Under the pieces are notes generated by a model, which saw only the letters and a list, made by a program, of their open reading frames with translations, ran no database searches and had not been told where the DNA came from. Shown piece by piece: positions 6,859 to 50,389 of a DNA stretch of 64,000 nucleotides. How positions within the stretch are numbered: the first letter of the stretch is position 1; the number at the start of each line of letters is the position of its first letter. The stretch is from NCBI GenBank assembly GCA_051530055.1, contig CM121342.1, positions 3,967,489 through 4,031,488 on the forward strand, read 5' to 3'. This stretch comes from Neoechinorhynchus agilis. Taxonomy: Eukaryota > Animalia > Acanthocephala. Position numbers and translations under genes: made by a program.

Positions 6859-6860
6859 GC

Positions 6861-22909: not shown

Positions 22910-23974
22910 CTAAAACAAATAATCACTCGGTTCATTTGGTTCAGATTGTTTTTGAGGCGTTAGTGTAGCGTCTCCTTCACAATCCTGCGGACCAAACAAA
23001 GAATTGAACGTGTTCCAATCGGTTCCATTATCTACATTTGTTTCGCCGTGTGCTGTGATGGCAAGTGGACGACGATCGTTTTCCTCGTCCCTTCGTTGTC
23101 CGTCATGCAATCTAGCGTCCAACTGATTGATCCATTCTACGCAATGATTACAATTCTGATTGCTACCATCATAGACTGACATTTGTGATTGGTTAAAGTA
23201 TCTCGGATCCGGCATGGGCTGCGCTGACGATCCTGGTTGACCTCCAGACTGCGAGGAATTCATTTTTGCAGTAGTTGACACAATAAAGTTCATTATAAAC
23301 GAAATAAGTCGATTTATAAGATGTTCATGTTTCTCGTGTCTCACTTGTAAACTCTTTAACTCTTTTAAAAACTCAGAATGAGCTGATTGGAAGAACTCAA
23401 GTTGGCTACACATGTACCGTTGATTGTTCTCCAAACGTTCCATCATAAGTTCAATATTTTCAAGACGACGTTGAACTGTTTGTTGACTAGTATCTTTTGT
23501 TTCACGATCACGACGTGTTATCATTTGTAGGAGATCGTGGCGACCTCGGATGAAATACGGATGAGCGAACATTATAGGACCTTCGACGTTTTGAACACTG
23601 CCGTCGAGTTCAGCTCGAGTTCGGACTGTTTTACGTCGTCTAAATCCGTATTGATTAAGTTGTCGATGAAAACTCATAAAATTTCGATGTCGAAAGTAAC
23701 CGGACATTACTCTTGAGACAAACGCACTCTCGTCCAAGATTATAAATGAGGTTCCTTGACGGTCCCATCCAATGATTGACGCATGGCTGGGGCAGTTTAC
23801 AATATTCCACAGTTTTAAAATAAAATCAGCAACGGGCTGTGAGGTGTTGTTGTTGCCGTCGACAGAGGCAGCTGGAAGGAGTTCGTATCCAGAGTGTGGG
23901 TAATCTTCCTCACCCGTTGAATCAGGCTTACTCCTTAGATGGCGATGGCTCATTCTATATGGCCCAGGAGGCAT
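22910..23974 (-). CDS. HSF: Heat shock transcription factor (HSF1-like), single exon
   Basis: DNA-binding domain FILKLWNIV...YFRHRNFMSFHRQLNQYGFRR...FAHPYFIRGRHDLLQMITRR, followed by an HR-A/B heptad region. Confidence 0.93.
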   Translation of the reverse strand: MPPGPYRMSHRHLRSKPDSTGEEDYPHSGYELLPAASVDGNNNTSQPVADFILKLWNIVNCPSHASIIGWDRQGTSFIILDESAFVSRVMSGYFRHRNFMSFHRQLNQYGFRRRKTVRTRAELDGSVQNVEGPIMFAHPYFIRGRHDLLQMITRRDRETKDTSQQTVQRRLENIELMMERLENNQRYMCSQLEFFQSAHSEFLKELKSLQVRHEKHEHLINRLISFIMNFIVSTTAKMNSSQSGGQPGSSAQPMPDPRYFNQSQMSVYDGSNQNCNHCVEWINQLDARLHDGQRRDEENDRRPLAITAHGETNVDNGTDWNTFNSLFGPQDCEGDATLTPQKQSEPNEPSDYLF

Positions 23975-25097
23975 CTATAAACAAACAAAAAGGATGGCTG
24001 AATTGTCTCATAAATTCTCTCTTAGATTAAAAACGTGTTGTCGAAAATGGACCCGGATTGTTGTTTTTGTTGATCATTTATTTTAAACATCACCAAACTC
24101 GAATCAAATTCACTCGGACGACAAAGCGATTGCTGGCTTGGTTTAAGATTCTGCATCACCACCTTACTTTTATTCGCAACAATCGATTCATTTTGCAACG
24201 AATTGTTACCTTGAAATGATGCTACAAAACATTTAAAACACCAATCTTTTGTGATGTTTTTCTGTACTGATTTCTCGTTGGTACGCCGGGACGAATACAC
24301 ACGCAACTCCTGAAGAGTTCGTATCTCTGTTGAGCTTCTAAAATCGATTCTTCAATAAACTACTTCAAAAAAAAGAATTTCGGGCTTTTTTTAAAGGAGA
24401 ACACCTTTTTTACAGGATTCGAAGAGAAAAGGATTTTATCGTTTTAAATCAAATCCAATGCAACTTTATTTACCTTTTGGTTCAAACAGAAAAAACACGA
24501 GTCGGTAAGGAAGTCAAAAAGTAAAAAAATGGCAGTCAATAAATTGCAAAGAGCGTTTGGCTATCATCAGGAGAGTTTAAGGTTGCAAAACGTACCATTA
24601 GGTGATTAAATTGTTATAAAAGTATCGTTTTTAATCAAAATCCGCGATATTTTGGTAGTTTGCCACGCAAAACAATGATATTTGTTAACTTAATTATTCC
24701 AAAAAGATTGTCGATCCAGATCATATTCATCTTCCCGTTATTAAATGCTTCGGAATCTGAGGTTTAAATTTAAAAAACGATGTACAAATCCTGCAAACCC
24801 ATCAATAGGAATAATCTTCACCGATAAGGGGGAAAATATTAGTCAACTACGAAGACCTTAAGCGAATTTATTGATTCATCTATTAAAAATTAGAATAAAA
24901 TATGAGAAAAGGGGGAAACCGGCACCCGTTTTTTGCCAATCTAAGGGACACTCGTCGACTTATGGATATTAACTTACAAAAAGGGAACGAAGGATACTAC
25001 AAAGAATTTAATTAATGGAAAGTGATTAAAAAGTTTTAATCAAATGACAGTACTTAAAACTATTAAGACCAAAGTATCGGATCCTTTATTTTGGACA

Positions 25098-28081
25098 CAA
25101 TAAATCCTTTAGGACGTAGCATCGACATTGAGCGGATCAGAATCGTCGCTAAGGAAAGAAGATTTAAAGGATCAATCAACAATAAATCCTTTAGGACGTA
25201 AGATCGATATTGAGCGGCTCAGAATCGTCGCTAAGGAAAGAAGATTTAAAGGATCAATCAACAATAAATCCTTTAGGACGTGCGATTGATATTGAACGGA
25301 TCAGAATGGTCGCCAGGGTAAGAAGATTTAAAGCATCAATAAACAATAAATCCTTTAGGACGTAAGATCGATATTGAGCCGACCGAGCCGTCGCTAAGGA
25401 AAGAAGATTTAAAGGATCAATCAACAATAAATCCTTTAGGACGTGGGATCGATATTGAGCCGACCGGAGCCGTCGCTAAGGAAAGAAGATTTAAAGGATA
25501 AATTAACAATAAATCCTTTAGGACGTGCGATTGATATTGAACGGATCAGAATGGTCGCCAGGGTAAGAAGATTTAAAGCATCAATAAACAATAAATCCTT
25601 TAGGACGTAGCATCGACATTGAGCGGATCAGAATCGTCGCTAAGGAAAGAAGATTTAAAGGATCAATCAACAATAAATCCTTTAGGACGTGGGATCGATA
25701 TTGAGCGGCTCAGAATCGTCGCTAAGGAAAGAAGATTTAAAGGATAAATTAACAATAAATCCTTTAGGACGTGCGATTGATATTGAACGGATCAGAATGG
25801 TCGCCAGGGTAAGAAGATTTAAAGCATCAATAAACAATAAATCCTTTAGGACGTAATCGAATTGAGCGACGACGTCGCTAAGGAAAGAAGATTTAAAGGA
25901 TCAATCAACAATAAATCCTTTAGGACGTGGGATCGATATTGAGCCGACCGGAGCCGTCGCTAAGGAAAGAAGATTTAAAGGATAAATTAACAATAAATCC
26001 TTTAGGACGTGATTGATATTGACGGATCAGAATGGGGGTTTGTAATAACAATAAATCCTTTAGGACGTAGCATCGACATTGAGCGGATCAGAATCGTCGC
26101 TAAGGAAAGAAGATTTAAAGGATCAATCAACAATAAATCCTTTAGGACGTGGGATCGATATTGAGCGGCTCAGAATCGTCGCTAAGGAAAGAAGATTTAA
26201 AGGATAAATTAACAATAAATCCTTTAGGACGTGCGATTGATATTGAACGGATCAGAATGGTCGCCAGGGTAAGAAGATTTAAAGCATCAATAACAATAAA
26301 TCCTTTAGGACGTAGCATCGACATTGAGCGGATCAGAATCGTCGCTAAGGAAAGAAGATTTAAAGGATCAATAAATCTTTGGACGTGGGATCGAATGAGC
26401 GCGAGCGTCGCTAAGGAAAGAAGATTTAAAGGATTCAACAATAAATCCTTTAGGCGTGGGATCGATATTGAGCGGCTCAGAATCGTCGCTAAGGAAAGAA
26501 GATTTAAAGGATAAATTAACAATAAATCTTTGGGTTGAATGAGCGACGAGTCGCTAGGAAGAAGATTTAAAGGATAATAACAATAAATCTTTTAGGACGT
26601 GGGATCGATATTGAGCGGTCAGATCGTCGCTAAGGAAAGAAGATTTAAAGGATCAATCAACAATAAATCCTTTAGGACGTGGGATCGATATTGAACGGAT
26701 CAGAATTGTCGCTAAGGAAAGAAGATTTAAAGGATAAATTAACAATAAATCTTTTAGGACGTGGGATCGATATTGAGCGGATCAGAATCGTCGCTAAGGA
26801 AAGAAGATTTAAAGGATCAATCAACAATAAATCCTTTAGGACGTGGATCGATATTGAGCGGATCAGAATCGTCGCTAAGGAAAGAAGATTTAAAGGATAA
26901 TCAACAATAAATCTTTTAGGACGTGGATCGATATTGAGCGGATCAGAATCGTCGCTAAGGAAAGAAGATTTAAAGGATCAATCAACAATAAATCCTTTAG
27001 GACGTGGGATCGATATTGACGGATCAGAATGTCGCTAAGGAAAGAAGATTTAAAGGATAATAACAATAAATCTTTTTGGACGTGGGATCGATATGAGCCG
27101 ACGAGCGTCGCTAAGGAAAGAAGATTTAAAGGATCAATCAACAATAAATCCTTTAGGACGTGGATGATATTGACGGATCAGAATGTCGCTAAGGAAAGAA
27201 GATTTAAAGGATAATAACAATAAATCTTTTAGGACGTGGGATCGATATTGAGCGGATCAGAATCGTCGCTAAGGAAAGAAGATTTAAAGGATCAATAACA
27301 ATAAATCTTTAGGACGTGGGATCGATATTGAGCGGTCAGAATCGTCGCTAAGGAAAGAAGATTTAAAGGATTAACAAACTTTGGACGTGATCGAATGAGC
27401 GCGAGTGGGGTTAATAAATCTTTAGGACGTGGGATCGATATTGAGCGACGACGTCGCTAAGGAAAGAAGATTTAAAGGATAAATTAACAATAAATCCTTT
27501 AGGACGTGCGATTGATATTGAACGGATCAGAATGGTCGCCAGGGTAAGAAGATTTAAAGCATCAATAAACAATAAATCCTTTAGGACGTAGCATCGACAT
27601 TGAGCGGATCAGAATCGTCGCTAAGGAAAGAAGGTTGGAGATTTAAGGATAATAACAATAAATCTTTTGGACGTGGGATCGAATTGAGCGGATCAGAATC
27701 GTCGCTAGGAAAGAAGATTTAAAGGATCAATTAAATCTTTAGACGTGATGATATTGACGGTGTCGTAGGAAGAAGATTTAAAGGATATAACAATAAATCT
27801 TTGGACGTGATGAATTGACGGATCAGAATGTCGTAAGGAAAGAAGATTTAAAGGATCAATCAACAATAAATCCTTTAGGACGTGGGATCGATATTGAGCG
27901 GCTCAGAATCGTCGCTAAGGAAAGAAGATTTAAAAGATAAATTAACAATAAATCTTTTTGGACGTGGGATCGATAATGAGCCGAACAGAGCCGTCGCTAA
28001 GGAAAGAAGATTTAAAGGATCAATCAACAATAAATCCTTTAGGACGTAAGATTGATATTGAGCCGACCGGAGCCGTCGCTA
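25098..28081. repeat. 82-bp satellite, ~36 copies, with unit variants and internal inverted repeats
   Basis: caataaatcctttaggacgt at 25098, 25180, 25262, 25344 and onward, with recurring variant classes. Confidence 0.95.
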
Positions 28082-30348: not shown

Positions 30349-33220
30349 TCAATCATCGCGTTTCTTAATCGGTTTCATGATCGAAGCAGCTGATCGGAAT
30401 AACTTTTTCCTTTCCTTCCTTTCAGCTTTAGATTCTACATTCTTCGATTTCCTTTTCTTAATTACTTGTGGTTCAAACGTAATGACAACATTACCACCAT
30501 CTGATTGTTGTTCGTCCATACAATCACCATCGACGGCTAATTTCTTCATTCGGTCAACAAACGGCTTATCTTGCTCACTATCTGAGTCGTTTTCAGTCAT
30601 AATATCGAAATCTATGTGAATGTGAGAATCTTCAATGTCATCGGAGACCATATCGACGAATGCTTCGGTACGTTCGATTTTTTTTTCAATAGATCCAGTC
30701 GAAACCATTTTTCCTTTATTGATCATACGTTTGTAATGCTCACTCACTTCATTTGGATCGAATTGAAAATCATCGTTTTCGAATAAATCCGCAAATCTTT
30801 TGTCCTCTAAAACAGAATCCTTGGCTCGACTTTTTAGTTGTTCGTATAATTCTGAATTGACTTTTACACTGTTTGGTACACTTTCATCCTTTTTCTCTTG
30901 TACTTTTTGAACAGATTCATGTTTCAATTTTCCAAACTTAATGGCGGCTTTGTCGTAAATGGTCTTTTCCACGATGAATCCGTTACTGTGACGGCTTCAA
31001 TAAAGTATGGAATTATTATGTTTAGAAGTCTTCACCTGCGGCGGTAAATGATTATTTCGATTAAAAAGACGTTCTGCACTAGAACACGATGCGGGCGATC
31101 GATTACTTTTACCTTTAGAGAAACTTAAAAGAGATTTGAAATTAAAAACGTTTTATTTTAAGTCTTTTTTTAAGCAGTCCGTCTGAATTTAGAATTATCA
31201 TTGAACGCAAGTTCAAAACCACTCATGTGCCACCCGGCAATATTCTAATCCATAAGATGAAACGCCTTTGACAGAGACTATTGAATGTATTTGTAAAGAC
31301 GAGCAGCGATGCATAATCTTTATTGGACTAATCGCCGGGTGGCACATGAGTGGTTTTGAACTTTGTTGTTGCGTTCAATGATAATTCTAAATTCAGACGG
31401 ACTGCTTAAAAAAGACTTAAAATAAAACGTTTTTAATTAAATATTTATAATCGACATTATAGTGAATAATTGTCGGTCAAATAATTCAATTCTTGCTTTA
31501 GGTCCCGATTTTCGAACGATGATACTACCAAGGTTCGCACGTCTCTCCAGGTATAGTTTTTACGGTTTTCATTTCTCTCATGGTCCTCTTCTTTGTAAAT
31601 CAACAACTCATTGATGAGTCCCGCCTCTTCCTCGGGAGGTATCTGAGAATCTGGAGGAATGTTTCAGCGGAATATAAAGTGATTTTATGCGCTTCCCTAG
31701 ACCAGATCGGTGATCTATGTGCCCATGGGAAATTATCAGCCGTGTGATAAAAAGGCCACACATTGATACTTAATAAAAGTTACCGGCTGGTCAATCTTCA
31801 AGGAAAGGAGAGATTGTTGAGGCTGGCGGAAGATTCTCCTTTAGGTTCATTTTGGGTGCAAAAGAAGATTCCTTCCAAAACACATATTTGATAGATACGA
31901 ATCCCGTCGTAATTTCTCAATTCTTAAGGATGGAAGGCCCACGCTCAGGGCGAAAATTAATTAATCTATAATTCTTTAATTACACGCCAAATATCAATTT
32001 AAAAATGGCAAATAAATATTCAAAGACATAAAAGCCTTCACATTCTGCATAAGATAAGGATGGGCAAAGCTAGTGGACAAATACTTGCCCAAGTCCAGCT
32101 CCTCAAGTTCATTTCTACTAACAAATCTATAGCCATCATAAGCGTCGTTCCAAACGACGGATTCCTTTAGTTCTTCTACGATTGTGTCTAAATAGGAGCA
32201 CCATGTAGGCGCCGGTCCCAGATCAGGTATAAAATAAGTATGAATCTTGGGAGAATCTGTTGGGACGAATATCAAACCGGATCCGCGTTGTGGAATACAC
32301 ATTGAGTTTATTTTTTTTGTAGACGGCACAACAAGTTTTTGATGGCCATTTGTATGATTGAATATTCGCAGGTATCGTCGATCACAAGTGGCGACTTGTT
32401 GATCATGAATAAACATGGTTTCGATTACGTGTACGCCGTTGTCTTTGGAAATCAATGGATTCGATGAACGAATATCGTATATATGAACGAGTCCATTCGA
32501 TGTCCCAATAGCCATTCTATAAGGAGCTTCAGGATCGAAATCGATTGCAGTCACTGAAGGTTGTCTAAACGTTGCCGGAATCGTACATTTTGCAACCATT
32601 GTTCGTGCTCGAGGATCCCACATTTGAACATGACCCCAAGTTGTTCCAACAGCGAGAAAATTGAATTCATTGTTAAGACAACATCGTTTGCATTCGTCGT
32701 GAATGTCGAATGGTGCCATAAAACGGCCGTGTTCAAGATTAAGTCGATGTATTTTACTTTCGCCCGCAATGTATAGTTCTGCTTGTTCGGACGAGAAGAC
32801 CATATCACTCGCTACCACAGGCACTCGCATTCTAAAATATCTAAGACCGTTCACATGAAACTCAAGTCGGCGGTCTTCTAAAAGAAAAACCAGTTTGGAA
32901 AAGTCAGGAGATAGAAAACACGTCTTCACGATTTCATAATCCATTCCTTGCTCGTACTTCATCGATGTTTCCGAAAGTTCGTAACAACGAACTCGAGGCT
33001 TATATGTCCCAGCCGCGATTGCGTATCGTCCGTCCGGACTAACTTTTACTTCATGGCAAACATCGGGCATTTCAAAGTCTTGAATGAGTTGGATGTGTCG
33101 TCGAAGATCCGGATTTCGGTTGAGGTGTTTACGTTTATCAACCGAAGATAGGAATTCGGGTAAATTCACGTCCGCGTTGAGGTGGTAAATGTAAGTGCCG
33201 TTGCTAGATATTCGTTTCAT
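30349..33220 (-). CDS. NOL10: Nucleolar protein 10 / Enp2 (WD40 + NUC153), two exons separated by a ~1.06-kb insertion
   Basis: HIQLIQDFEMP...GTYKPRVRCYEL...IPDLGPAPTWCSYLDTIVEELKE. The second exon resumes T AAC GGA TTC (NGFIVEKTIY, cf. HGFFMDIRLY) and contains DKRFADLFENDDFQFD. Confidence 0.92.
31140..31438. mobile_element. MITE/foldback-like element with ~100-bp inverted arms inside the NOL10 intron
   Basis: 31140-31237 is the reverse complement of 31334-31438 (one short indel), with a ~96-nt spacer. Confidence 0.8.
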
Positions 33221-34002
33221 CTATAAACAAAATTCCGTTTTATTCAAACAAAATTTTTAAAATTTGAAGTGGTCAGAAACATCAATCGAAATAAAAATTT
33301 TCCAATGATTTTCTCGTTTATGTCATTCAAACAAATTTTAAAATAGCTTTTTTAAACATTGAATTCGAGTGGTTAAATATTTTATTATTATGCGGCCGCT
33401 TTTTTTCAAACCCCAAGAAATAATTAACAAAAAAAATGAATATTGATAAATTCAAATCAATCGAAATAAAATCCAGACGAATTTTTTAGCTCAAAATGAA
33501 TTTTAAGTTATGATATTAACTATAAAATCCAGGCGAATTCGTGCAACAAAAAACTATTTCGTTATTGACGACGAATAAAGACTTATTTTCAAATGATTTT
33601 CTCGTTTATGTCATTCAAACAAATTTTAAAAAGTTGAGTGGTTAGAAACATCAATCCAAATAAAATCTAAGCGAATTTTGATTAATGATCTCAAAATAAA
33701 ATCCAGGCGAATATTAATTAAACTATTAAAGTTTTGGAAAAATTCTTCAAAAAATTACGGTATAAAGAGCGAATTTATCTTCGTTTGCAATTCGCGTAAG
33801 AAGCACCGAAATCAACAATAGTTTCAAAGATATTGAAGCCAAAAACAAAGCAACGTTCAAAATCTGAATGGTAACGAAATAATTAGCGAAGATCTTAGTT
33901 GCAGAAAGCTGTAAAGCGTTAGAATCAATGGAAGAATCAAAATTCGTGACGTGTTTGGACATCAAAATTGAAAATATCATGAATCGAAGGAAAGGCTCAG
34001 CC

Positions 34003-37000
34003 TGTTGTAATAGCTGGCGTCAGTAGATCGAAAAATCTACTTTCGCCGAACAAAAATGGTTTTTTTATTCAACATAACACGGAAAACGTTAGCATGAACC
34101 TTATGACGTCGTTAATGTTCACTACATAGCCCCTCAAGAAGGTTCTTCCTTTTTTTGCGAGGTCTGCCTCCTTTAGGAGGTTGAGCGAGAATGACGGGTG
34201 ATGATGGATCGATATACGCTTGTTTGAGGCGGTCTATCGATACGTTCTCTGGTTTTCCACCGAGATCGATCATGAAAAACTTTTCGTTGCGATCAAGTGC
34301 TTTGTAAGGTCCGGTATCCGGCAGCTGTATAGGATTCCCATGCTGAGGGCGTTCTGCTGCCGAGGAACCTTGACGTCGTTAATGGTCACTACATAGCCCC
34401 TCAAGAAGGTTCTTCCTTTTTTTGCGAGGTCTGCCTCTTTAGGAGGTTGAGCGAGAATGACGGGTGATGATGGATCGATATACGCTTGTTTGAGGCGGTC
34501 TATCGATACGTTCTCTGGTTTTCCACCGAGATCGATCATGAAAAACTTTTCGTTGCGATCAAGTGCTTTGTAAGGTCCGGTATCCGGCAGCTGTATAGGA
34601 TTCCCATGCTGAGGGCGTTCTGCTGCCGAGGAACCTTGACGTCGTTAATGGTCACTACATAGCCCCTCAAGAAGGTTCTTCCTTTTTTTGCGAGGTCTGC
34701 CTCCTTTAGGAGGTTGAGCGAGAATGACGGGTGATGATGGATCGATATACGCTTGTTTGAGGCGGTCTATCGATACGTTCTCTGGTTTTCCACCGAGATC
34801 GATCATGAAAAACTTTTCGTTGCGATCAAGTGCTTTGTAAGGTCCGGTATCCGGCAGCTGTATAGGATTCCCATGCTGAGGGCGTTCTGCTGCCGAGGAA
34901 CCTTGACGTCGTTAATGGTCACTACATAGCCCCTCAAGAAGGTTCTTCCTTTTTTTGCGAGGTCTGCCTCCTTTAGGAGGTTGAGCGAGAATGACGGGTG
35001 ATGATGGATCGATATACGCTTGTTTGAGGCGGTCTATCGATACGTTCTCTGGTTTTCCACCGAGATCGATCATGAAAAACTTTTCGTTGCGATCAAGTGC
35101 TTTGTAAGGTCCGGTATCCGGCAGCTGTATAGGATTCCCATGCTGAGGGCGTTCTGCTGCCGAGGAACCTTGACGTCGTTAATGGTCACTACATAGCCCC
35201 TCAAGAAGGTTCTTCCTTTTTTTGCGAGGTCTGCCTCCTTTAGGAGGTTGAGCGAGAATGACGGGTGATGATGGATCGATATACGCTTGTTTGAGGCGGT
35301 CTATCGATACGTTCTCTGGTTTTCCACCGAGATCGATCATGAAAAACTTTTCGTTGCGATCAAGTGCTTTGTAAGGTCCGGTATCCGGAGCTGTATAGGA
35401 TTCCCATGCTGAGGGCGTTCTGCTGCCGAGGAACCTTGACGTCGTTAATGGTCACTACATAGCCCCTCAAGAAGGTTCTTCCTTTTTTTGCGAGGTCTGC
35501 CTCTTTAGGAGGTTGAGCGAGAATGACGGGTGATGATGGATCGATATACGCTTGTTTGAGGCGGTCTATCGATACGTTCTCTGGTTTTCCACCGAGATCG
35601 ATCATGAAAAACTTTTCGTTGCGATCAAGTGCTTTGTAAGGTCCGGTATCCGGCAGCTGTATAGGATTCCCATGCTGAGGGCGTTCTGCTGCCGAGGAAC
35701 CTTGACGTCGTTAATGGTCACTACATAGCCCCTCAAGAAGGTTCTTCCTTTTTTTGCGAGGTCTGCCTCTTTAGGAGGTTGAGCGAGAATGGGGGATGAT
35801 GGATCGATATACGCTTGTTTGAGGCGGTCTATCGATACGTTCTCTGGTTTTCCACCGAGATCGATCATGAAAAACTTTTCGTTGCGATCAAGTGCTTTGT
35901 AAGGTCCGGTATCCGGCAGCTGTATAGGATTCCCATGCTGAGGGCGTTCTGCTGCCGAGGAACCTTGACGTCGTTAATGGTCACTACATAGCCCCTCAAG
36001 AAGGTTCTTCCTTGCGAGGTCTGCCTCCTAGGAGGTTGAGCGAGAATGACGGGTGATGATGGATCGATATACGCTTGTTTGAGGCGGTCTATCGATACGT
36101 TCTCTGGTTTTCCACTGAGATCGAGCATGAAAAACTTTTCGTTGCGATCAAGTGCTTTGTAAGGTCCGGTATCCGGCAGCTGTATAGGATTCCCATGCTG
36201 AGGGCGTTCTGCTGCCGAGGAACCTTATGACGTCGTTAATGGTCACTACATAGCCCCTCAAGAAGGTTCTTCCTTTTTTTGCGAGGTCTGCCTCCTTTAG
36301 GAGGTTGAGCGAGAATGACGGGTGATGATGGATCGATATACGCTTGTTTGAGGCGGTCTATCGATACGTTCTCTGGTTTTCCACTGAGATCGAGCATGAA
36401 AAACTTTTCGTTGCGATCAAGTGCTTTGTAAGGTCCGGTATCCGGCAGCTGTATAGGATTCCCATGCTGAGGGCGTTCTGCTGCCGAGGAACCTATGACG
36501 TCGTTAATGGTCACTACATAGCCCCTCAAGAAGGTTCTTCCTTTTTTTGCGAGGTCTGCCTCCTTTAGGAGGTTGAGCGAGAATGACGGGTGATGATGGA
36601 TCGATATACGCTTGTTTGAGGCGGTCTATCGATACGTTCTCTGGTTTTCCACTGAGATCGATCATGAAAAACTTTTCGTTGCGATCAAGTGCTTTGTAAG
36701 GTCCGGTATCCGGCAGCTGTATAGGATTCCCATGCTGAGGGCGTTCTGCTGCCGAGGAACCTTATGACGTCGTTAATGGTCACTACATAGCCCCTCAAGA
36801 AGGTTCTTCCTTTTTTTGCGAGGTCTGCCTCCTTTAGGAGGTTGAGCGAGAATGACGGGTGATGATGGATCGATATACGCTTGTTTGAGGCGGTCTATCG
36901 ATACGTTCTCTGGTTTTCCACTGAGATCGAGCATGAAAAACTTTTCGTTGCGATCAAGTGCTTTGTAAGGTCCGGTATCCGGCAGCTGTATAGGATTCCC

Positions 37001-37323
37001 ATGCTGAGGGCGTTCTGCTGCCGAGGAACCTTGACGTCGTTAATGGTCACTACATAGCCCCTCAAGAAGGTTCTTCCTTTTTTTGCGAGGTCTGCCTCCT
37101 TTAGGAGGTTGAGCGAGAATGACGGGTGATGATGGATCGATATACGCTTGTTTGAGGCGGTCTATCGATACGTTCTCTGGTTTTCCACTGAGATCGAGCA
37201 TGAAAAACTTTTCGTTGCGATCAAGTGCTTTGTAAGGTCCGGTATCCGGCAGCTGTATAGGATTCCCATGCTGAGGGCGTTCTGCTGCCGAGGAACCTTA
37301 TGACGTCGTTAATGGTCACTACA
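34003..37323 (-). mobile_element. Non-autonomous Ty3/Gypsy LTR derivative amplified into a 242-bp tandem array (~13 copies)
   Basis: The unit encodes an integrase C-terminal tail (TGPYKALDRNEKFFMLDLSGKPENVSIDRLKQAY), then a GAGGGG purine tract and the LTR start TGTAGTG. Complete ~124-bp LTR at 34003-34126 with AATAAA; whole element TG...CA; 4-bp TSD agcc at 33999-34002 and 37324-37327. Confidence 0.88.
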
Positions 37324-37920
37324 AGCCTCACAAATTCTCTTGCAAATTCGAGAATTTATGAGGATCCAAAGATACATGGGTCCTTTTCTTTGTTAATTAA
37401 CAAGTAATTCCACAAGGCGGGGTTCCTGTATTTCCGGGGAGAGACGTAGAAGCGACATCGACGTTTCAGAGGAAGAAGTTTTTGTGCAGGGAAGGAAAGA
37501 GACGTTAAAAGGAAGGAACCCGTTTTCTGGGTACAAAGCTTACTAGAAATTTTTCTTCGAAAACAGTAAGTATCGGCGAACAGTCGAAGCCCAATGACGA
37601 TCGATGCTGCTTTTTTGTGGCTCAGAGGGCGTTTAAAAATGAAAGATAAAATTTTTGAAATTTATCCATAAAATAAGATAATAAGGAATCGGGTGGAAAA
37701 TGCGCCTTCCGCGTTTTAAGACATTCAGCCATTCTGGATTTATGGTCGCAGAGGGACTGAGTGTTTTTCGGTCAGGTGAAATGAATCCATCAGGCTGGTG
37801 ATTGTAGCATTTTGACAAGCTAAAAACGCTTCTTTTCCGAATACTCCATTCGCCTGATCGTTAACTCGATCCACTTTTAAATTTTAAGCAGTGAAGTGAG
37901 ACAAAGTGGAGTCACTACTT

Positions 37921-38493
37921 TCATAAATAGGATTCTCGATGAGCAGTCCTTCTTTCCTTAATTTCGTTCGCCGTCCGAACAGGAATATTGCCTTGGAAAA
38001 ATATTGGAAACACTTCTGAAATATTAATTTCCCGGTCGACATGAACGTGTCTTTGTGCCCTTTCCAAAGATCCAATCATTGATAGCATAGAAAACGATAT
38101 CCTGTAAGCATCGCTTAGACAGACATCATCGATCGTTGCAACCTCGATATCTTCTCCAGTTGAATCTTTGATAGCTAATCGTTCGGTTTCCTGCATAAGA
38201 AGGAAGTTTATCTCCTTTGGTGTTCGACTTCTCATTCTCGGACCAAGCAGAGCAGCGAATGGTGATTTCGACGGTTTCTTCATCGATACCATCGACAGAA
38301 CTTTAAATATCGATTTGTTTCTCGCTTCGTAATTGGACAAGAGACCAGCAATATTCTCACCGACGTATTTCAAAGCCTTAACGGGATCGTGATTCTCAGT
38401 CATCATATCTAACAATTCTTGAATGCAAAGAAAACATTTGACTTGATCGCTCCGTTCCAGGAGATTGTCCCATCTCTCATTCAAAGATTCGCA
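37921..38493 (-). CDS. GID8: GID8/TWA1-like CTLH-CRA domain protein, 5' (LisH) exon not located
   Basis: ESLNERWDNLL...FLCIQELLDMM...ALKYVGENIA and VLSMVSMKKPSKSPFAALLGPRMRSRTPKEINFLL resemble GID8 (TLALLAFDSPEESPFGDLL...EVNQAV). ttgacag acceptor before 38493. Confidence 0.65.
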   Translation of the reverse strand, partial: CESLNERWDNLLERSDQVKCFLCIQELLDMMTENHDPVKALKYVGENIAGLLSNYEARNKSIFKVLSMVSMKKPSKSPFAALLGPRMRSRTPKEINFLLMQETERLAIKDSTGEDIEVATIDDVCLSDAYRISFSMLSMIGSLERAQRHVHVDREINISEVFPIFFQGNIPVRTANEIKERRTAHRESYL

Positions 38494-38539
38494 CTGTCAA
38501 ATAAATTTCCGATCATTAAAACGTCTATTCTGCAACGAC

Positions 38540-40440
38540 AACTTCAGCGTTTAAAATCACTATCCCAGACTGATAAGCGAGATCACAACATCTACAATTT
38601 TATTAAATTATTCAATTCTGTGATTCACACCCTCCACTCTGACAGCACAAACGACCATTCCTTGGCCATGTCCTCCGTAACCTATATTTCCTAACTTCTG
38701 CAATATCTAAGAAATTCATTGTAATATCCAACCTTGACCCACCATGGATAACCCTTATCTTGAAACTCCTGCAAAATCAAACATATGCGTCCCATCGATA
38801 TAAATCTCCTGACTTACCCCGTTTACAAAAACACCATCCCACTTCCTTTCCTCTAAAATTCGTTCAGGTTGCAATTCAACATTGTGGTGGGCCGTCAAGG
38901 ACTCTATTGGTCTACACGAATCCTGATTCCTTCCTAATTTGACCTCCACTGAATTAAAACAGGTTCTAGACTCCATCAATCAGAACCTTTGTCCTGACTG
39001 AAATTACAATCAATGCTCCACACCAGACTCCACAAAAAACTATCACTCCCACACCTGAAACTTTTGTCAACTCGCCGATACTCCCCTTAGTTTCGTCATA
39101 TGAAGTATTACAGCATCTAAAGAAATTACGTCGAAATTAGTCCTCTAAATCCGAAATCCCAAACTGGGCTCTTCGCTGCATCATCCTCGAACTCATAGAC
39201 CCAATTGCCCACATTATAAACCACAGTTTTTTATATAGCATCTACCCCTCATGCCTGAAAACTGCTAAATTATCCTTGTTCCAAAAAATGGACATCCTAT
39301 TTCCACCGAATCATTGCGTCCAATATCCATTCTACCTGCTGTTTCAAAAATCATAGAGAAATGCTTCAAATCTCGCCTTCTTTCACTTCTCAACAACAAA
39401 TTATTGCCCCAATAATTCGGCTTCCGGCCCAAATTTTCCGCAACGGATTCCTTACTTTGCATTTATGACACGCTCCCACGAAACCTCGAAAATAATCTCT
39501 CCCACTAAGTCCGTCTCATTCAACTGGAGTTATGGAAAGTATTCGGCTTCGTGGACCATTCACTCCTTCTCCTGGCCTGCTATGATTTTAGTCTCGACTT
39601 ATGGCAGATCCACTGGCTGTCCTCTTATCTTCACAATCGCAAACAATACATTCGCTGTCGATCTACATCGTCGATCATCAAATATCTCACCGAAGGTGTC
39701 CCTCAAGGTGCTGTCCTGTCACCACTTCCTTTTAGTATTTTCCTATACGACCTTAATCCTCTCGCGTATCATTCTAAACTTTTCATAAATGCCGACGATC
39801 TCACCCCCATCACTAAATCACCACCCCACCTCTCCCTCTCCTTAAACTCTAAAGAAACCATTCACATATAAAAGATTTCTGCACCAATCACAAATTCCAC
39901 TTGAACTTCTTTAAATGCTTCGGGATGATATCCTCAATCTCCCGCAAGGTAATATCATACCATGACCTTCCAAATGACATCCAACAAGTCACCTCCCTAA
40001 GAATTATGGGTCTTTAATTTCAATCAAACCTGAAATTGGATTCGCACATTTTACTCCATCCAGCCTCCTCAAACGCCTCCTACATTTAGGAGTCCCTTTC
40101 CCTCCCAATCTTACTTCAGCTCTATTTTACCCTTCCTCACCTACGGTTATCCCGTCTTTTGCAACCTTTTCCAATCACAAATCCGTCGCTTTGAAACCTT
40201 TCATAGAAGAGCCTCTAAAATTTGCAGATTTGATTTTCCCCACCCACCAAATGCCTTCATGAGATTTTCATCAAACATTCAAAACGTTTCTCAACCTTTT
40301 CACCACAGTTTTACCACGTGTTGTCCCCTTTTCACATGAGCACAACGCTCATAATCTCAATTCGTTTCATCCTTCTGTACCTCGCAGTTGCCCAGCGATC
40401 TTATTGACCAGTTGGTTAGACATATAAATATTAATTCAGC
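38540..40440 (+). mobile_element. Decayed CR1/Jockey-like LINE reverse transcriptase
   Basis: Fragmented motifs LRPISILPAVSKIIEK, FGFRP, GVPQGAVLSP and ADDL. A 12-bp direct repeat ttctgcaacgac (38528-38539 and 40539-40550) may be a TSD. Confidence 0.85.
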
Positions 40441-41650: not shown

Positions 41651-41917
41651 CCATTCTCGACACAACTAAAAGCTTTTTAGATGACAGGCGAAGCTTTCTC
41701 GTGGTAATAATGGACTTTTCAATCACGGTGCTTTCGATCTATCAGAAATGTCATCCAACTCATTGCGGAGGTGCCAAACAGCTGAGTCAATTCCGAACAA
41801 AGAATCTTTGAAGGCATAACAATGAGAATTATGAATCACTAGAGCCGCAGGTCTTCGTTTAAAATGAGCGATGAAAACGCAATTTTTTGTGAGCTTGGTC
41901 TCGGAATTTTGATCGAA

Positions 41918-42064
41918 ATGTACTCGACTTTTTACAGCACTCCATATAGCGGATACCAATATCGATACAATTATAACTATCAGTACCAATACCCAGGATG
42001 CTCGAATTATTATTCGCCAGCTCCATATTATTACGGCAGCAACGATGGATGTTCCATATCTTAA
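41918..42064 (+). CDS. 48-aa Tyr-rich micro-protein, copy 1
   Basis: MYSTFYSTPYSGYQYRYNYNYQYQYPGCSNYYSPAPYYYGSNDGCSIS (15 Tyr); paralogue at 43714 with the frame preserved. Confidence 0.55.
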   Translation: MYSTFYSTPYSGYQYRYNYNYQYQYPGCSNYYSPAPYYYGSNDGCSIS

Positions 42065-42325
42065 AAGACTGCTTGGAAATACATTTGACCATTACTTAAA
42101 ATATGTCGTTGAACGGCAGGAACACTTTGCGCGTTAATCATAGTGGTCATTAATGTAAAACTTCTCTTCTTGGAACGAGTGATCTCGACAATTTCGCCTT
42201 TTTCTCGTCAATGTATTTTCTCTCTCTAAAAAGGGGGCATTTTACTAGTTGACCAAAGTTCGATCTCAGAGATTATCGTATGTTATTTTATTCATCCACT
42301 AAATCGATTTCTTATGTCCTTTAAG

Positions 42326-43620
42326 ATGACATCGAACTCAGAAAATGAAATTAATGTTTTCGTAAGTATTTTTAAGTTTCGTTAATTCGCTAGTTAGGCC
42401 CAAGATTTCTTGTTTATTGTTTTTCATTCGTCTAAAAAAATATTTTTGGTTTGTTCCTCAACAAATTGGTTTCCTGCAATGTTCAGTTGTTGGAAGGTCA
42501 TTTCTGAGGCCTTTAAGATCGGCAACATGTAACGGTTCCTTCCTTAATCCATCACCCGCGACGAACAAAGCAACTTAAATCTCCCTCATTTCAACCCTCC
42601 AAAATTCCCTTCCGCGCCGTAATCTACTCCAATACTCGTAGCCTCCTTCCCTAAACTACATGAAATTTCACTCAATTCATCTACCTCAAAAGCCAACGTA
42701 GTCATTTCAACAAAAACGTGGCTTACTCCCTTCAACAGCAATTCAGCCATCCTTCCCGGGTACTCTTCCTTACATACCACGAAGACCTTCCAGGAGGGGC
42801 GGTCTCAATTTACCCTCGATAATCGCTACCATATTCTTCGGCTCTCTACAAAACTCCGATCTAGAATTCATCGCAGCCTTCTTCTCAGCTCCTCTAAGAA
42901 ATGGCTTTAGAGAATTCACAATTGCTGGCGTCTACCGCCCCTTAAACAAAACGCCCAAAACGATACCACGAAGACCTTCCAGGAGGGGTGGTCTCAATTT
43001 ACGCACGATGATCGCTGCCATATTCTTCGGCTTTCTGCAAAACCCCGATCTAGAATTCATCGCAGTCTACTTCTCAGCTCCTCCAAGAAATATCCCTAGT
43101 AAAAATCACAATTGCTGGCATCTACCGCCCTCCAGCCTCTCATCCTGGGTTTGAATTGACGAGCAATTCGTTTGTATTTTATTTTTATTCTGTTATATTC
43201 TTGAATGTTTAGCGACAATAAATTGGTTTCCTGCAATGTTCAGTTGTTGAAAGGTCACATCTACGACGGTGTAAGTTCCTTCCATAAAATGAAACCGTAC
43301 GTTAAAATGTTTGAGTAGACAATCGTGATTAGATCGACGAATAAGAAATCAGACGAATATCGAATTGTCCGACCAATCAATCAGTTGTCAACGTACTCAT
43401 GGGGTTGGCCACTTCAGCAGGTAAGTAGAAAGAAGCTCTCATGGCTTCCTTTGTTTTTATCTTCAAATACACCAAACATTATTTGTGATGGAATTTTCCC
43501 AAATAGATTAATCGTTCAAGTCGCACTTTTTCGGTCATTGTGCTATCGATCCTCCCACTCATTGTTTTTAGTTCTGCGGGAATACCAAACAGGAGTCAAT
43601 TCCGAACAATGAATTTATGA
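42326..43620 (+). CDS. Putative small three-exon gene with a hydrophobic C-terminal segment
   Basis: In-frame exons 42326-42361, 43319-43420 and 43507-43620 with strong gtaagt donors. No family recognised. Confidence 0.35.
42463..43257 (+). mobile_element. LINE APE-endonuclease fragment flanked by 38-bp direct repeats
   Basis: TIAGVYRP / TIAGIYRPP motifs in an internally duplicated segment; aaattggtttcctgcaatgttcagttgttg(g/a)aaggtca at 42463-42500 and 43220-43257. Confidence 0.7.
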
Positions 43621-43713
43621 ACAAACAACGATGAGAATTCTGAATCACTAGAGCCGCGCTTAAGTTGAGCGACGAAGGTGTGACTTTTTTGTGAGCTTGG
43701 TACTCTCAATCAA

Positions 43714-43860
43714 ATGTATCCGTCTTACTACAACACTCCATATAGCGGATATCAATATGGATACAATTACAACTATTACCAAAATCCAGGATATCCTTAC
43801 TATGGTTATTCGCCAGCTCCATATTATTACGGCAACAACGATGGATGTTCCATATCGTAA
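43714..43860 (+). CDS. 48-aa Tyr-rich micro-protein, copy 2
   Basis: MYPSYYNTPYSGYQYGYNYNYYQNPGYPYYGYSPAPYYYGNNDGCSIS (17 Tyr). Confidence 0.55.
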   Translation: MYPSYYNTPYSGYQYGYNYNYYQNPGYPYYGYSPAPYYYGNNDGCSIS

Positions 43861-44111
43861 AGGACTGCTTGGAATGACATTTGACCGCAAAAATTTTAAT
43901 ATCATATTTTAAAAAAGTGATTGAACGGTTTGAACACTTTTAGTTTTAAGACTCGGCGGTGACCCGATTTATGTTGTTTTCGCTTCAAATCGAATCACGT
44001 GTTTGTTGTTCATTTGTTTTTGTTTACCAAACCCTCAAGGTTTAGAAACACGGGGAGTATCGATCTACTAAGACTACGAGCACACACTTTTTCGTTCGGT
44101 CTATCAATCCA

Positions 44112-47612: not shown

Positions 47613-48384
47613 AAAGCCAGTTTACTTTTCTCAAGTAAAACGAAACGTCCACTGCTAAATTCGGAAAATTTTAACAAAAATTCTTCGTCCATTAACGACT
47701 TTTGCTTTATTGCAGTCGATTTAGCGTTTATTTGTAATTGTGTGCGATTTATGTTAATGGGGATTTAATGGCTTTTTGTTTGACCTTTAAATTAAGGCGA
47801 AAAACGGGAATTTTGTAAAATATACACAATGAATTATTCATCCAATTATAGGAAATAAATTGATGAATAATTCATTGATCGATGTGGTGTTATTCACCAA
47901 ATAAGGACACGATTCTCCTCGAGGACAATTCTTTATGAACTTTAAAAGAATAAAACGAAAGTGTAGATCATTGCTTCCTTTGTGAAAAATATCGGACATA
48001 ATAAATTTCTTCAAATTTTCCGCCTTATAAAAACGTCTCGAATTATTTTTGTTGTCAAGATTAAGTTTAAATCGAATTGTAAATTAATACAAAAAGTATA
48101 TTTGCAAATGGTTGTTCGGCTGCTCCCTTGATAGCCGCAGAGAGAGAAAAAACACATTTGCAATCAATACTGATCAATACGAATGAGTTTTTTTTGTGAA
48201 TTAACACTTTCAGCGGTCGGAGAAATGTCATGTTTTACATCGGAGTCTGATGAAACGTTAAGAGTTCGTGCATCTCTCCGGATCCTCAGATACCTCCAAG
48301 AGGGAGGGACTCAACAGTGAGTTCCTTCCTTTAGCGGTAAACAAAAAATTATCAAATCTATAAGTTCTCTTTTTCGTATAGTTT

Positions 48385-48960
48385 GTTATGATTGTTCGGC
48401 AGCTTCTTTGATGGCCGCGTTGCATCGCCGCGCTGATTCGCCGCAGCAGGAAGCTGATGGATCGCATATCGCCGGTGGCATGTTTTAGCATCCCTACCAG
48501 TCGGGAAAAAGGAAATAATCGGCTTCTTTTCCGAGACATCCCAGTGTTTCAACCGCAATCGGGATGAAAATATATTGATGCCCATCGAGCGATTCCTCGC
48601 TGAAGCTGGGCATCCCGTAAGTGGGATGTTGCGAGCGTGTTGGGGCAGGTAAAATCCCAAACGAGTATTTTCCCGGAGCACCATGGAAGGGCTCCATCGG
48701 GGCGTTTACCGTCGTTCCGGGAGAGTCCGACTGGTTCGAGTCGAGCTGGAAAAACGGCCGTTGAGAGGGCTTTCTTTGAGTGGCGAGCAGTTGAACGCTT
48801 GTAGTCAAGGCCGTGAGTTCCCGTTCACTGTCTCACCGCACCGACACGTATTTGAGCCTGAGAATTCGATGCCCAAACGAAGTCCCGCAGCTACGGTGGT
48901 GGCCTGGTCATCCAGGCCAACAGCCGTGATCGGAAAAGCCTTCAAGAAGTCGCTGGAGTG
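48385..48960 (-). mobile_element. 3' fragment of a CRE-like LINE, near-identical to 57245-57830
   Basis: GLSRNDGKRPDG, LVWDFTCPNTLATSHL and FIPIAVETLG motifs (restriction-like endonuclease region). Confidence 0.9.
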
Positions 48961-50042: not shown

Positions 50043-50389
50043 ATCATTTGATCACTCGATTGGTTTGAGTACTTTTTAAAGCCATCTTCGATGATTTGTA
50101 GAAATCAATCGACATTTAACCAACTAAACAAAATGCGGTTGAATAAAGCGATTTTCGTCGAGATGATTAAATAAATTTGGTTTCAATCAACCCTAAGACC
50201 ACAATTTCTTTCACATATCGCTCCCTTTTCACACAAACACAACACCGTTTAATCCTCCTATATATCGCACATCTCCATGCTGCCCAATCTTCCCGGATAT
50301 CAGAACTTGAAATGAACCTGAGGAAAGACCAACCTTAAAAACGCTCCTGCAAACAGACCTTCCAACACAACCAGATATTCTCAAACGAA

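What the first reader, a model, noticed from the sequence alone, without database searches (positions are those of the whole stretch)
34003..37323. LTR retrotransposon converted into a satellite with insertion boundaries intact
On the minus strand: TSD ggct, then the first ~30 nt of the LTR, then ~13 x [integrase tail + purine tract + LTR first ~30 nt], then a complete ~124-bp LTR and TSD ggct. A deletion from LTR nt ~30 to the integrase tail evidently made a 242-bp unit that was amplified through LTR homology. It resembles tandem-array TRIMs, but lacks a PBS and has truncated internal LTRs. Each unit carries a plus-strand priming tract and an integrase-recognised LTR end.
Basis: partly seen in the sequence, partly recalled or inferred. 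Interest (0 to 1): 0.7.

Follow-up and report, generated by a model that had tools for sequence, protein, structure and literature searches.

The report
Gypsy retrotransposon remnant amplified into tandem array
A dead fragment of a Gypsy-type jumping gene, consisting of its last protein-coding piece and one very short terminal repeat, has been copied head-to-tail 12 times inside its original insertion site; this is a clean animal example of a known route from mobile element to tandem repeat.

Summary
On the minus strand, 37323-34127 holds 12 units (not 13) of about 267 bp (not 242), 95-100% identical to each other. A 124-bp segment (34126-34003) follows and shares only its first 31 nt with the start of each unit. 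GGCT flanks both ends.

Each unit encodes the last ~80 codons of a Ty3/Gypsy Pol (best E = 5e-17, 977 hits). In full-length homologues the match lies at the extreme C-terminus, after the integrase core.

Four relatives show the same junction of G-rich purine tract and TGTAG, and have short LTRs (about 95-132 bp). This supports reading the 124 bp as a complete LTR.

There is no PBS, gag, RT or integrase core. No parent copy was found in the data I could search; the source genome itself could not be searched as DNA.

All 12 units share one non-parental junction (LTR nt 31 joined to the pol tail). This fits one illegitimate event followed by homology-driven expansion.

The closest precedent is maize CRM1TR/CRM4TR, in mirror image. 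TA-TRIMs and tandem LTR retrotransposons are also close.

About 31% of this window is unrelated tandem arrays, so the region is generally prone to amplification.

Verdict: a new member of a known kind, of modest interest.

The parts
37324..37327 (-). Upstream copy of the 4-bp direct repeat GGCT (putative target-site duplication)
   Evidence: Read directly from the sequence. It lies immediately 5' of the first LTR start.
37293..37323 (-). Outermost 31-nt LTR stub (TGTAGTGACCATTAACGACGTCATAAGGTTC), interpreted as the truncated 5' LTR
   Evidence: 30/31 identical to nt 1-31 of the full LTR. It is followed directly by the pol tail, with no PBS.
35989..37323 (-). Units u1-u5 (269, 267, 269, 268, 262 bp): variant block A. 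The tail reads ..FMLDLSG.. (u3 has the intermediate ..FMIDLSG..). The stub keeps the TA dinucleotide in u1, u3 and u5.
   Evidence: Unit alignment and translations. L/S are derived states relative to the family consensus IDxGG.
34127..35988 (-). Units u6-u12 (263, 266, 266, 267, 267, 266, 267 bp): variant block B. The tail reads ..FMIDLGG.., matching the family consensus. The stubs lack TA (29 nt).
34115..34364 (-). Example of one pol-tail segment (u12): an 83-codon ORF, SAAERPQHGNPIQLPDTGPYKALDRNEKFFMIDLGGKPENVSIDRLKQAYIDPSSPVILAQPPKGGRPRKKRKNLLEGLCSEH. It runs through the purine tract and ends at the TAA at LTR nt 13-15 (34114-34112).
   Evidence: Translation. Homology to Ty3/Gypsy Pol C-termini. 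The ORF is intact in 7 of 12 units and frameshifted by 1-7-nt deletions in u5, u6, u7, u8 and u11.
34127..34135 (-). Purine tract plus spacer (GAGGGG CTA) abutting the LTR start; candidate plus-strand primer site. It is repeated at the end of every unit.
   Evidence: Same arrangement in the relatives: L004 CTGAGGGGAGCTA|TGTAGCG, L003 CTGGGGGGAGCAG|TGTAGCG, L002 CTGGGGGGAGTAG|TATAGCG, L005 CTGGAGGGAGG|TGTGTGG. The window and L004 ORFs cross this stretch in different frames, so the conservation is at the DNA level.
34143..34156 (-). A-rich purine run AAAAAAAGGAAGAA, 17-30 nt upstream of the LTR (it codes part of RKKRKN)
Evidence: It is not adjacent to the LTR.
34003..34126 (-). Complete 124-bp LTR (TGTAGTGA...TTACAACA), with AATAAA at nt 58-63 (34069-34064)
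   Evidence: TG..CA ends with 5/6 terminal inverted repeat (TGTAGT/TGTTGT). Followed by GGCT. The length is in the range of relatives' LTRs (132 bp in L004, about 95 bp in L003).
33999..34002 (-). Downstream copy of the 4-bp direct repeat GGCT

Best explanation
This is the immobile remnant of one insertion of a Ty3/Gypsy-type LTR retrotransposon from a lineage with very short (about 100-130 bp) LTRs. The element integrated into the intergenic DNA about 780 bp upstream of the NOL10 start codon, in the same orientation, and made a 4-bp target-site duplication (GGCT).

One illegitimate event joined LTR nt 31 to the last ~80 codons of pol. That removed R/U5, the PBS, gag, protease, RT, RNase H and the integrase core. 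What remained was stub(31 nt)-tail/PPT(236 nt)-full LTR, that is, a 31-bp direct repeat with 267-bp spacing.

Misaligned homologous exchange between these repeats then expanded the structure stepwise to 12 units. The exchange could be unequal sister-chromatid exchange, replication slippage or non-allelic gene conversion. Once two or more units existed, whole units could pair.

The array does nothing as a transposon. Units have no PBS and no U5 end, so they can be neither reverse-transcribed nor integrated. Copy number now changes only through host recombination and replication.

Shown: the anatomy, the Gypsy origin of the tail, the conserved PPT/LTR-start junction, the flanking repeat, the single junction type, and the block structure of variants.

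Inferred: that the deletion came first, that amplification was homology-driven, and that GGCT is an integrase-made duplication.
For: (1) There are 12 units of 262-269 bp plus a 124-bp terminal segment that shares nt 1-31 with each unit start.

(2) The unit peptide hits 977 proteins at E<=1e-3 (best 5e-17) in an exhaustive HMMER search. Long hits have the architecture RVT_1 / RT_RNaseH_2 / Integrase_H2C2 / rve. The match sits 100-130 residues after the rve domain and within 7-105 residues of the C-terminus, for example P0104 residues 896-957 of 964.

(3) The G-rich purine tract, a 0-3-nt spacer and TGTAG/TGTGT are conserved in four relatives. In L004 pol also reads through into the LTR (stopping at the TAG of TGTAG). 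Its 132-bp LTR is followed by a PBS-like TGGTGACCCCGACA and the start of a DUF7041 gag.

(4) ACA+GGCT at the right end has a chance expectation of about 0.2-1.6%.

(5) Only one non-parental junction type exists in all 12 units, and the period equals the stub-to-LTR spacing exactly. A non-homologous amplification step would have created a second junction type.

(6) Variants form blocks: u1-u5 against u6-u12, with an intermediate u3 and an alternating TA/no-TA stub pattern in u1-u5. This points to several successive local duplications or conversions rather than one burst.

(7) Seven of the 12 tails are still open and there are no nonsense substitutions, so the array is young.

(8) Precedent: the LTR-UTR~LTR model for maize CRM1TR/CRM4TR (PMC3648361), and tandem LTR elements flanked by a single TSD (PMC4717578; PMC11899658).
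Against: - No parent element, solo LTR or second array was found. There is nothing else in the window. No protein in the 5.8-billion-protein collection shares three 5-mers with the unit peptide. The metagenome scans found nothing.
- The array's own ORFs are not on record either, so absence from the gene-call collection is only weak evidence.
- The right LTR boundary has no second full LTR to confirm it.
- 31 bp is short for efficient homologous exchange.
- GGCT also occurs one nucleotide out of register at the end of every unit's purine tract (GGGGCTA), which is an unexplained coincidence.
- Roughly 31% of the window is unrelated tandem arrays. A generic, locus-independent amplification process clearly operates here.
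- Copy number cannot be checked against reads.
Confidence: 0.65

Rival explanations
1. Same components, reverse order. A full-length element first acquired a tandem duplication of the contiguous parental segment [pol tail-PPT-LTR nt 1-31] at its 3' end. This could have happened by genomic tandem duplication, or by RT template switching from the start of the tail back to U3 nt 31. The duplication expanded. Recombination between the 5' LTR (nt 1-31) and an internal stub then deleted gag-pol, as in solo-LTR formation. The end product is identical.
For: The unit is colinear with a contiguous parental stretch, so one duplication creates the same single junction. This genome region makes tandem arrays from many unrelated sequences, about 31% of the window. 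LTR-LTR recombination is the standard route for loss of internal regions (established knowledge; also PMC11899658).
Against: It needs recombination on only 31 bp of homology to remove several kilobases. It needs one more class of event than strictly necessary. No full-length relative with such a 3' duplication was seen among the four 3' ends inspected.
Confidence: 0.2
2. The array was born before integration. A multimeric cDNA, made by repeated RT template switches between U3 nt 31 and the pol tail, was integrated in one step, which is why a single TSD flanks the whole array.
For: A single TSD encloses everything. Insertion of pre-formed tandem structures has been proposed for TRIMs and tandem LTR elements (PMC11899658).
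Against: Shared variants occur in blocks of adjacent units, with an intermediate unit. Independent copying from one template would instead give singletons. Twelve consecutive identical non-homologous switches are implausible. The left end lacks R-U5-PBS, which are needed to make such a cDNA at all.
Confidence: 0.04
3. GGCT is not an integrase-made duplication. The cDNA inserted by an integrase-independent, single-strand-annealing route at a site resembling its PPT end (upstream flank) and its PBS (downstream flank), as shown for Tf1. That route typically yields truncated or tandem elements.
For: The left flank GAGGCT resembles the unit's PPT end GGGGCT(A). The right flank GGCTGAGCC loosely resembles the PBS-like TGGTGACCC of relative L004. 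The mechanism and its link to truncation and tandem formation are described in PMC11042837.
Against: The similarity is out of register by one nucleotide. It is not significant in an alignment of the flank against the unit end (173 of 2000 shuffles reach the score). Identical 4-mers on both sides are exactly what integrase produces. Both LTR termini are intact. The parent's PBS is unknown.
Confidence: 0.05
4. The array, or its copy number, is an assembly artefact: a long-read mis-expansion or a collapse of haplotypes.
For: Several differences between units are 1-nt deletions in short G/A runs, as expected from consensus errors. Reads could not be examined.
Against: There are structured, non-random variant blocks and substitutions shared by adjacent units. 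The unique flanks run cleanly into annotated host ORFs on both sides. Ten other arrays in the same window show similar quality.
Confidence: 0.05

Closest known systems
CRM1TR / CRM4TR tandem repeats of maize (Sharma, Wolfgruber & Presting 2013, PMC3648361)
   Same: The monomer is built entirely from one Ty3/Gypsy element. It has one illegitimate junction created by an internal deletion that leaves two LTR-homologous stretches in direct orientation. Growth follows by unequal exchange or gene conversion between them.
   Different: This is the mirror image. In maize the retained part is LTR + 5' UTR joined to the downstream LTR. Here a 31-nt 5' LTR stub is joined to the pol tail + PPT + 3' LTR. 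The maize arrays are pericentromeric, large and millions of years old, and their parents are known. This array has 12 units, lies in gene-rich DNA, keeps its flanking 4-bp repeat, and has no known parent.
Tandemly arrayed TRIMs (TA-TRIMs; Gao et al. 2016, PMC4717578) and tandem LTR retrotransposons (Morales-Diaz et al. 2025, PMC11899658)
   Same: LTR-derived and internal segments alternate, and a single target-site duplication flanks the whole array. Unequal LTR-LTR recombination or insertion of pre-formed tandems are the proposed origins.
   Different: Those arrays share complete internal LTRs, and their internal regions keep both PBS and PPT. Most have 2-4 internal regions. Here the internal LTRs are cut to 29-31 nt, there is no PBS, and the internal region is a pol fragment.
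Satellites arising from tandem repeats inside LTR retrotransposons (e.g. Ogre 3' UTR repeats; Vondrak et al. 2020, PMC7004042)
   Same: A tandem array seeded from the 3' part of a Ty3/Gypsy element (abstract only).
   Different: There the repeats are short non-coding motifs that pre-exist within mobile copies and later expand elsewhere. Here the unit spans coding tail, PPT and LTR start, and sits within one insertion's boundaries.
TE tandem dimers expanding to arrays in Drosophila (McGurk & Barbash 2018, PMC5932611)
   Same: An animal example of a TE converting to a tandem array, with a small array (about 16 copies of hobo) as an early stage.
   Different: Those dimers are attributed mainly to double insertion of whole elements. 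Here the junction is an internal deletion or duplication junction, not an end-to-end junction.

Membership tests
Ty3/Gypsy (Metaviridae-type) LTR retrotransposon, as a remnant | Pol-derived coding sequence of Gypsy type | tested here: met
   The unit peptide matches C-termini of proteins with RVT_1, RT_RNaseH_2, Integrase_H2C2 and rve domains. Best E = 5e-17, 977 hits.
Ty3/Gypsy (Metaviridae-type) LTR retrotransposon, as a remnant | LTR with TG...CA termini and short terminal inverted repeats | tested here: met
   TGTAGTGA...TTACAACA, 124 bp, 5/6 inverted termini. Only one full copy exists, so the 3' boundary rests on ACA+GGCT.
Ty3/Gypsy (Metaviridae-type) LTR retrotransposon, as a remnant | Target-site duplication of 4-6 bp flanking the element | tested here: met
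   GGCT at 37327-37324 and 34002-33999. Chance about 0.2-1.6%. The empty site was not available.
Ty3/Gypsy (Metaviridae-type) LTR retrotransposon, as a remnant | Polypurine tract directly upstream of the 3' LTR | tested here: met
   GAGGGG+CTA before TGTAG. The same arrangement occurs in four relatives, in different reading frames. Priming activity was not tested.
Ty3/Gypsy (Metaviridae-type) LTR retrotransposon, as a remnant | Primer-binding site after the 5' LTR; two full LTRs; gag, RT and integrase core | tested here: not met
   No TGG-type PBS motif in the 3321 bp. The 5' LTR is reduced to 31 nt. No RT or IN similarity occurs anywhere else in the window. It is therefore a remnant, not an element.
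TA-TRIM / tandem LTR retrotransposon (LnI(n-1) structure) | Complete LTRs shared between successive internal regions | tested here: not met
   The internal LTR pieces are 29-31 nt of 124.
TA-TRIM / tandem LTR retrotransposon (LnI(n-1) structure) | One TSD flanking the whole array | tested here: met
TA-TRIM / tandem LTR retrotransposon (LnI(n-1) structure) | Each internal region carries a PBS and a PPT | tested here: not met
   A PPT-like tract is present in every unit, but the PBS is absent.
Retrotransposon-derived tandem repeat of the CRM1TR type (LTR-X~LTR origin) | The monomer is wholly accounted for by parts of one LTR element, with a single illegitimate junction | tested here: met
   29-31 nt of LTR start plus 236 nt of pol tail/PPT make up the whole unit. 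One junction (LTR nt 31~tail) is identical in all 12 units.
Retrotransposon-derived tandem repeat of the CRM1TR type (LTR-X~LTR origin) | A parent element with the same LTR and internal sequence exists in the same genome | not testable with these tools
   No tool searches this eukaryotic assembly as DNA. The indirect searches were negative.
Satellite DNA | Long arrays and/or many loci with high genomic copy number | tested here: inconclusive
   There is one 3.2-kb, 12-unit array in 64 kb. Genome-wide abundance is unknown.

The most novel reading that the evidence does not exclude
The array was generated by the retroelement's own replication machinery rather than by host recombination. A concatemeric cDNA, made by repeated template switching between U3 nt 31 and the pol tail (possibly between two co-packaged RNA variants), was integrated in a single event with one TSD. 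Retrotransposition itself would then be able to seed a ready-made tandem array.
Probability: 0.05. Interest if true: 0.6.

Novelty: new member of a known kind. Interest (0 to 1): 0.3.

Why it matters
It captures an early and unusually legible stage of the transposon-to-tandem-repeat transition in an animal genome. Both insertion boundaries are still present, there is only one rearrangement junction, the coding fragment is still largely open, and the unit variants record the steps of expansion.

If the parent and allelic states can be found, the order of events could be read directly. That would show whether deletion or duplication came first, and whether expansion was by exchange, slippage or conversion.

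The principle is already established in plants (CRM1TR/CRM4TR, TA-TRIMs, tandem LTR elements) and in Drosophila. The find therefore adds an example rather than a concept.

The more general point worth following is that about 31% of this gene-containing window consists of unrelated, highly homogeneous arrays of 80-475-bp units.

Tried and rejected
1. Word-indexed protein search with the 88-aa unit peptide found no candidate. Pfam on the peptide found no family. The tail lies outside curated domains, and only the exhaustive HMMER search revealed the family.

2. Exact-product look-ups of four array ORFs (53, 97 and 89 aa) found nothing on record. This route could therefore not reveal other arrays.

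3. A metagenome DNA scan for the LTR start and a back-translated scan for the tail gave no match or no confirmed relative.

4. tblastn of long Gypsy Pol homologues against the window found nothing outside the array. A search for the LTR elsewhere in the window gave only 10-14-nt chance hits.

5. I tested whether the left flank is a degenerate unit end, which would undermine the TSD. Local and end-anchored alignments are not significant against shuffles.

6. Rfam found no RNA family in the window.

7. I tried to name the organism. The window comes from GCA_051530055.1, record CM121342.1. Its proteins are singletons at 90% identity. NOL10 is at best 42% identical to any bilaterian sequence. Literature look-ups of both accessions were uninformative. 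The source is a divergent metazoan and remains unnamed.

8. The LINE-like RT at 57676-58761 is unrelated to the array.

9. Two further relatives (P0235, P0225, P0012) were not on record for locus retrieval.
Full report
**What is there**

Tandem Repeats Finder reports one array at 34104-37327, with period 267, 12.1 copies, 98% matches and score 6210. On the minus strand the 23-nt motif TGTAGTGA[C/A]CATTAACGACGTCA occurs 13 times, spaced 262-269 bp apart. It occurs nowhere else in the 64 kb, and 0 matches are expected by chance.

Twelve complete units (u1 = 37323-37055 through u12 = 34393-34127) are followed by a 124-bp segment (34126-34003). That segment matches the unit start only over nt 1-31 and is otherwise unique. 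Pairwise unit identity runs from 94.8% to 100%, with a mean of 98.5%.

GGCT lies immediately outside both ends, at 37327-37324 and 34002-33999. The period is 267 rather than 242, and the number of tail-bearing units is 12 rather than about 13.

**Is the coding part an integrase tail?**

Each unit carries an 83-codon ORF: SAAERPQHGNPIQLPDTGPYKALDRNEKFFMIDLGGKPENVSIDRLKQAYIDPSSPVILAQPPKGGRPRKKRKNLLEGLCSDH. It runs through the purine tract and stops at a TAA at nt 13-15 of the next LTR start.

- A word-indexed search and Pfam found nothing.
- An exhaustive HMMER search of 1.84 billion representatives gave 977 hits at E<=1e-3 and 59 at E<=1e-10. The best was 5e-17, at 43-60% identity.
- Long hits carry RVT_1, RT_RNaseH_2, Integrase_H2C2 and rve domains. 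The matched stretch lies about 100-130 residues after the rve domain and close to the C-terminus. Examples are P0104 896-957 of 964, P0038 825-889 of 938 and P0053 524-590 of 615.
- The family consensus is FVRRDxHxxPLQxPYTGPYKVLxRxxKxFxIDxGGRxExxSxDRLKPAxxDPxxPVxLAQPPRRGRPP. It is found in fish, molluscs, a copepod and a nematode.

The tail is therefore a genuine Ty3/Gypsy Pol C-terminus, retained from about four residues upstream of the conserved RR..H motif to the stop.

**Is the 124-bp segment an LTR?**

There is no second full copy, so I looked at the 3' ends of the closest relatives. I used short flanks only (see referred step). The junctions are:

| Source | Purine tract and spacer | LTR start |
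|---|---|---|
| Window | CTTCTTGAGGGGCTA | TGTAGTGA |
| L004 (61% aa identity) | ATTCTGAGGGGAGCTA | TGTAGCGT |
| L003 | CTGGGGGGAGCAG | TGTAGCGG |
| L002 | CTGGGGGGAGTAG | TATAGCGG |
| L005 | CTGGAGGGAGG | TGTGTGGC |

All four relatives show a G-rich purine tract, a 0-3-nt spacer, then TGTAG/TGTGT. In the window and in L004 the pol ORF crosses this stretch in different reading frames. The conservation is therefore of a cis-element, not of protein.

In L004 the LTR candidate is bounded on the other side by a PBS-like TGGTGACCCCGACA and the start of a DUF7041 gag-type ORF (E = 7e-4, truncated by the contig end). That gives an LTR of 132 bp. L003 has a 95-bp TGTAG...CTACA candidate. Both carry an AATAAA, as does the window's LTR at nt 58-63.

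A 124-bp LTR is thus normal for this lineage. The right boundary (ACA followed by GGCT) has a chance expectation of roughly 0.2-1.6% over a 250-nt search range. No PBS-type motif occurs in the 3321 bp. No RT or integrase-core similarity occurs anywhere else in the window.

**How it most likely arose**

All 12 units, including the outermost one next to the flanking GGCT, carry the same single non-parental junction, LTR nt 31 joined to the pol tail. The period equals the stub-to-LTR spacing exactly. This has two consequences.

- A fragment lacking its 5' LTR that was later duplicated would not begin with an LTR stub next to a target-site duplication.
- A non-homologous amplification step would have created a second junction type.

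The most economical history is therefore one illegitimate event followed only by homologous events. Unequal exchange, slippage or conversion then expanded it.

This mirrors the LTR-UTR~LTR model proposed for maize CRM1TR/CRM4TR (PMC3648361).

An equally structural alternative starts with a tandem duplication of the contiguous parental segment [tail-PPT-LTR 1-31] in a full-length element. That duplication could be genomic or made by RT template switching. Recombination between the 5' LTR and a stub would then remove the body. The sequence alone cannot separate the two orders.

**Evidence on the mode of expansion**

- Units fall into two blocks. u6-u12 read ..FMIDLGG.., which matches the family consensus and is therefore ancestral. 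u1, u2, u4 and u5 read ..FMLDLSG.., and u3 is intermediate (..IDLSG..).
- In u1-u5 the stub alternates between a form with TA (as in the full LTR) and forms without it.
- Shared derived variants in adjacent units, an intermediate unit and a dimer-like alternation indicate several successive local duplications or conversions. They do not fit a single rolling-circle or single-cDNA burst.
- Seven tails are intact. Five are broken by 1-7-nt deletions, some in short G/A runs that could be consensus errors. There are no nonsense substitutions. The array is young.

**Context**

The window is from NCBI assembly GCA_051530055.1, record CM121342.1 (16.4 Mb), near 4.0 Mb.

The array lies between the 3' end of a CTLH-like ORF (37921-38484, minus strand) and the start of NOL10 (ATG at 33220, minus strand). 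It is about 600 bp from the first and about 780 bp from the second, in the same orientation as both.

The host is a metazoan whose NOL10 is at most 42% identical to any sequence in the collection. Its proteins are singletons at 90% identity. I could not name it.

About 19.8 kb of the 64 kb (31%) consists of 13 tandem-array intervals with periods of 80-475 bp and 75-99% matches. Apart from one adjacent pair near 3.5-5.3 kb, they share no sequence with each other. Tandem amplification is thus a general habit of this region. That raises the prior for the 'duplication first' order. It also lowers the need for anything special about LTR sequences.

**What remains unexplained or untested**

- No parent, solo LTR or second array was found.
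- GGCT occurs in three places: both flanks, and one nucleotide out of register at the end of every unit's purine tract (GGGGCTA). The right flank GGCTGAGCC also loosely resembles the PBS-like tract of L004.
- Integrase-independent Tf1 insertions land at sites resembling the PPT end and the PBS start, and yield truncated or tandem elements (PMC11042837). I keep this as a low-probability alternative to a true target-site duplication.
- Against that alternative, the flank/unit similarity is not significant.

**Comparison with known systems and verdict**

The locus works like the CRM1TR/CRM4TR class of retrotransposon-derived tandem repeats. It resembles TA-TRIMs and tandem LTR retrotransposons in being enclosed by one target-site duplication (PMC4717578; PMC11899658).

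It fails the TA-TRIM/tandem-LTR definition because its internal LTRs are cut to 29-31 nt and it has no PBS. It is not demonstrably a satellite: one locus, 12 copies.

Single units carry a U3 end and a purine tract but no U5 end or PBS.

I classify it as a new member of a known kind, a tidy animal example, of modest interest (0.3).

Noticed in passing
window 3541-4898, 5082-5318, 6151-6857, 6860-9450, 12618-15224, 17466-17926, 21242-21957, 25097-28081, 50382-50593, 53054-53945, 58832-59672, 60562-63490: Twelve further tandem-array intervals have periods of 80-475 bp and 75-99% matches. Together with the studied array they cover about 31% of the window. Apart from one adjacent pair near 3.5-5.3 kb they share no sequence with one another, so each arose independently from local DNA.
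   Followed up: partly
window 57676-58761 (-); 48384-48960 vs 57244-57831: A 361-aa ORF has a partial RVT_1 match (YLDD-type, non-LTR/LINE-like), and a 588-bp segment is duplicated at 97.6% identity 9 kb away. This is a recently active non-LTR retrotransposon family, unrelated to the array.
   Followed up: partly
window 38790-39098 vs 55869-56200 (inverted), 39841-40138 vs 55510-55835 (inverted), 18970-19269 vs 19998-20332, 41774-42090 vs 43585-43886: Pairs of dispersed ~300-335-bp repeats at 79-87% identity, possibly SINE- or MITE-like elements. They were not characterised.
   Followed up: no
window 26001-28000 and 38001-40000: Extreme GC skew: +0.31 over the 82/245-bp array and -0.36 in the region just upstream of the CTLH-like ORF. 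The 38-40 kb stretch is G-rich on the minus strand, with no array called there.
   Followed up: no
window 716-2245(-), 22910-23974(-), 30349-30972(-) + 31994-33220(-), 37921-38484(-), 49371-50042(+), 54273-55046(+): Host genes with large exons: a La-domain protein, HSF, NOL10 (N-terminal propeller exon plus a NUC153 exon), a CTLH-like ORF, a ribosomal L10/MRTO4-like ORF and a weak PI31-like ORF. NOL10 is at most 42% identical to any known homologue, so the source is a poorly sampled, divergent metazoan lineage.
   Followed up: partly
L004 (JGI 3300040781 contig Ga0450784_533583), 501-1166: In the closest relative, a 1.2-kb contig runs pol tail, PPT, 132-bp LTR, PBS-like tract and gag start without a break. 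This is either a tandem element sharing one LTR or an assembler path through identical LTRs.
   Followed up: partly
window 37324-37332, 34127-34135 (and each unit end), 33994-34002: GGCT appears in both flanks and, one nucleotide out of register, at the end of every unit's purine tract (GGGGCTA). The right flank GGCTGAGCC loosely resembles a relative's PBS-like tract. This may be coincidence, or a hint of homology-guided insertion.
   Followed up: partly
window 34127-37323 (-): The commonest unit length, 267 bp, is exactly 89 codons. In TA-less units the pol frame therefore continues in phase from one unit to the next, interrupted only by the TAA inside each LTR stub. This is probably coincidental.
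   Followed up: no
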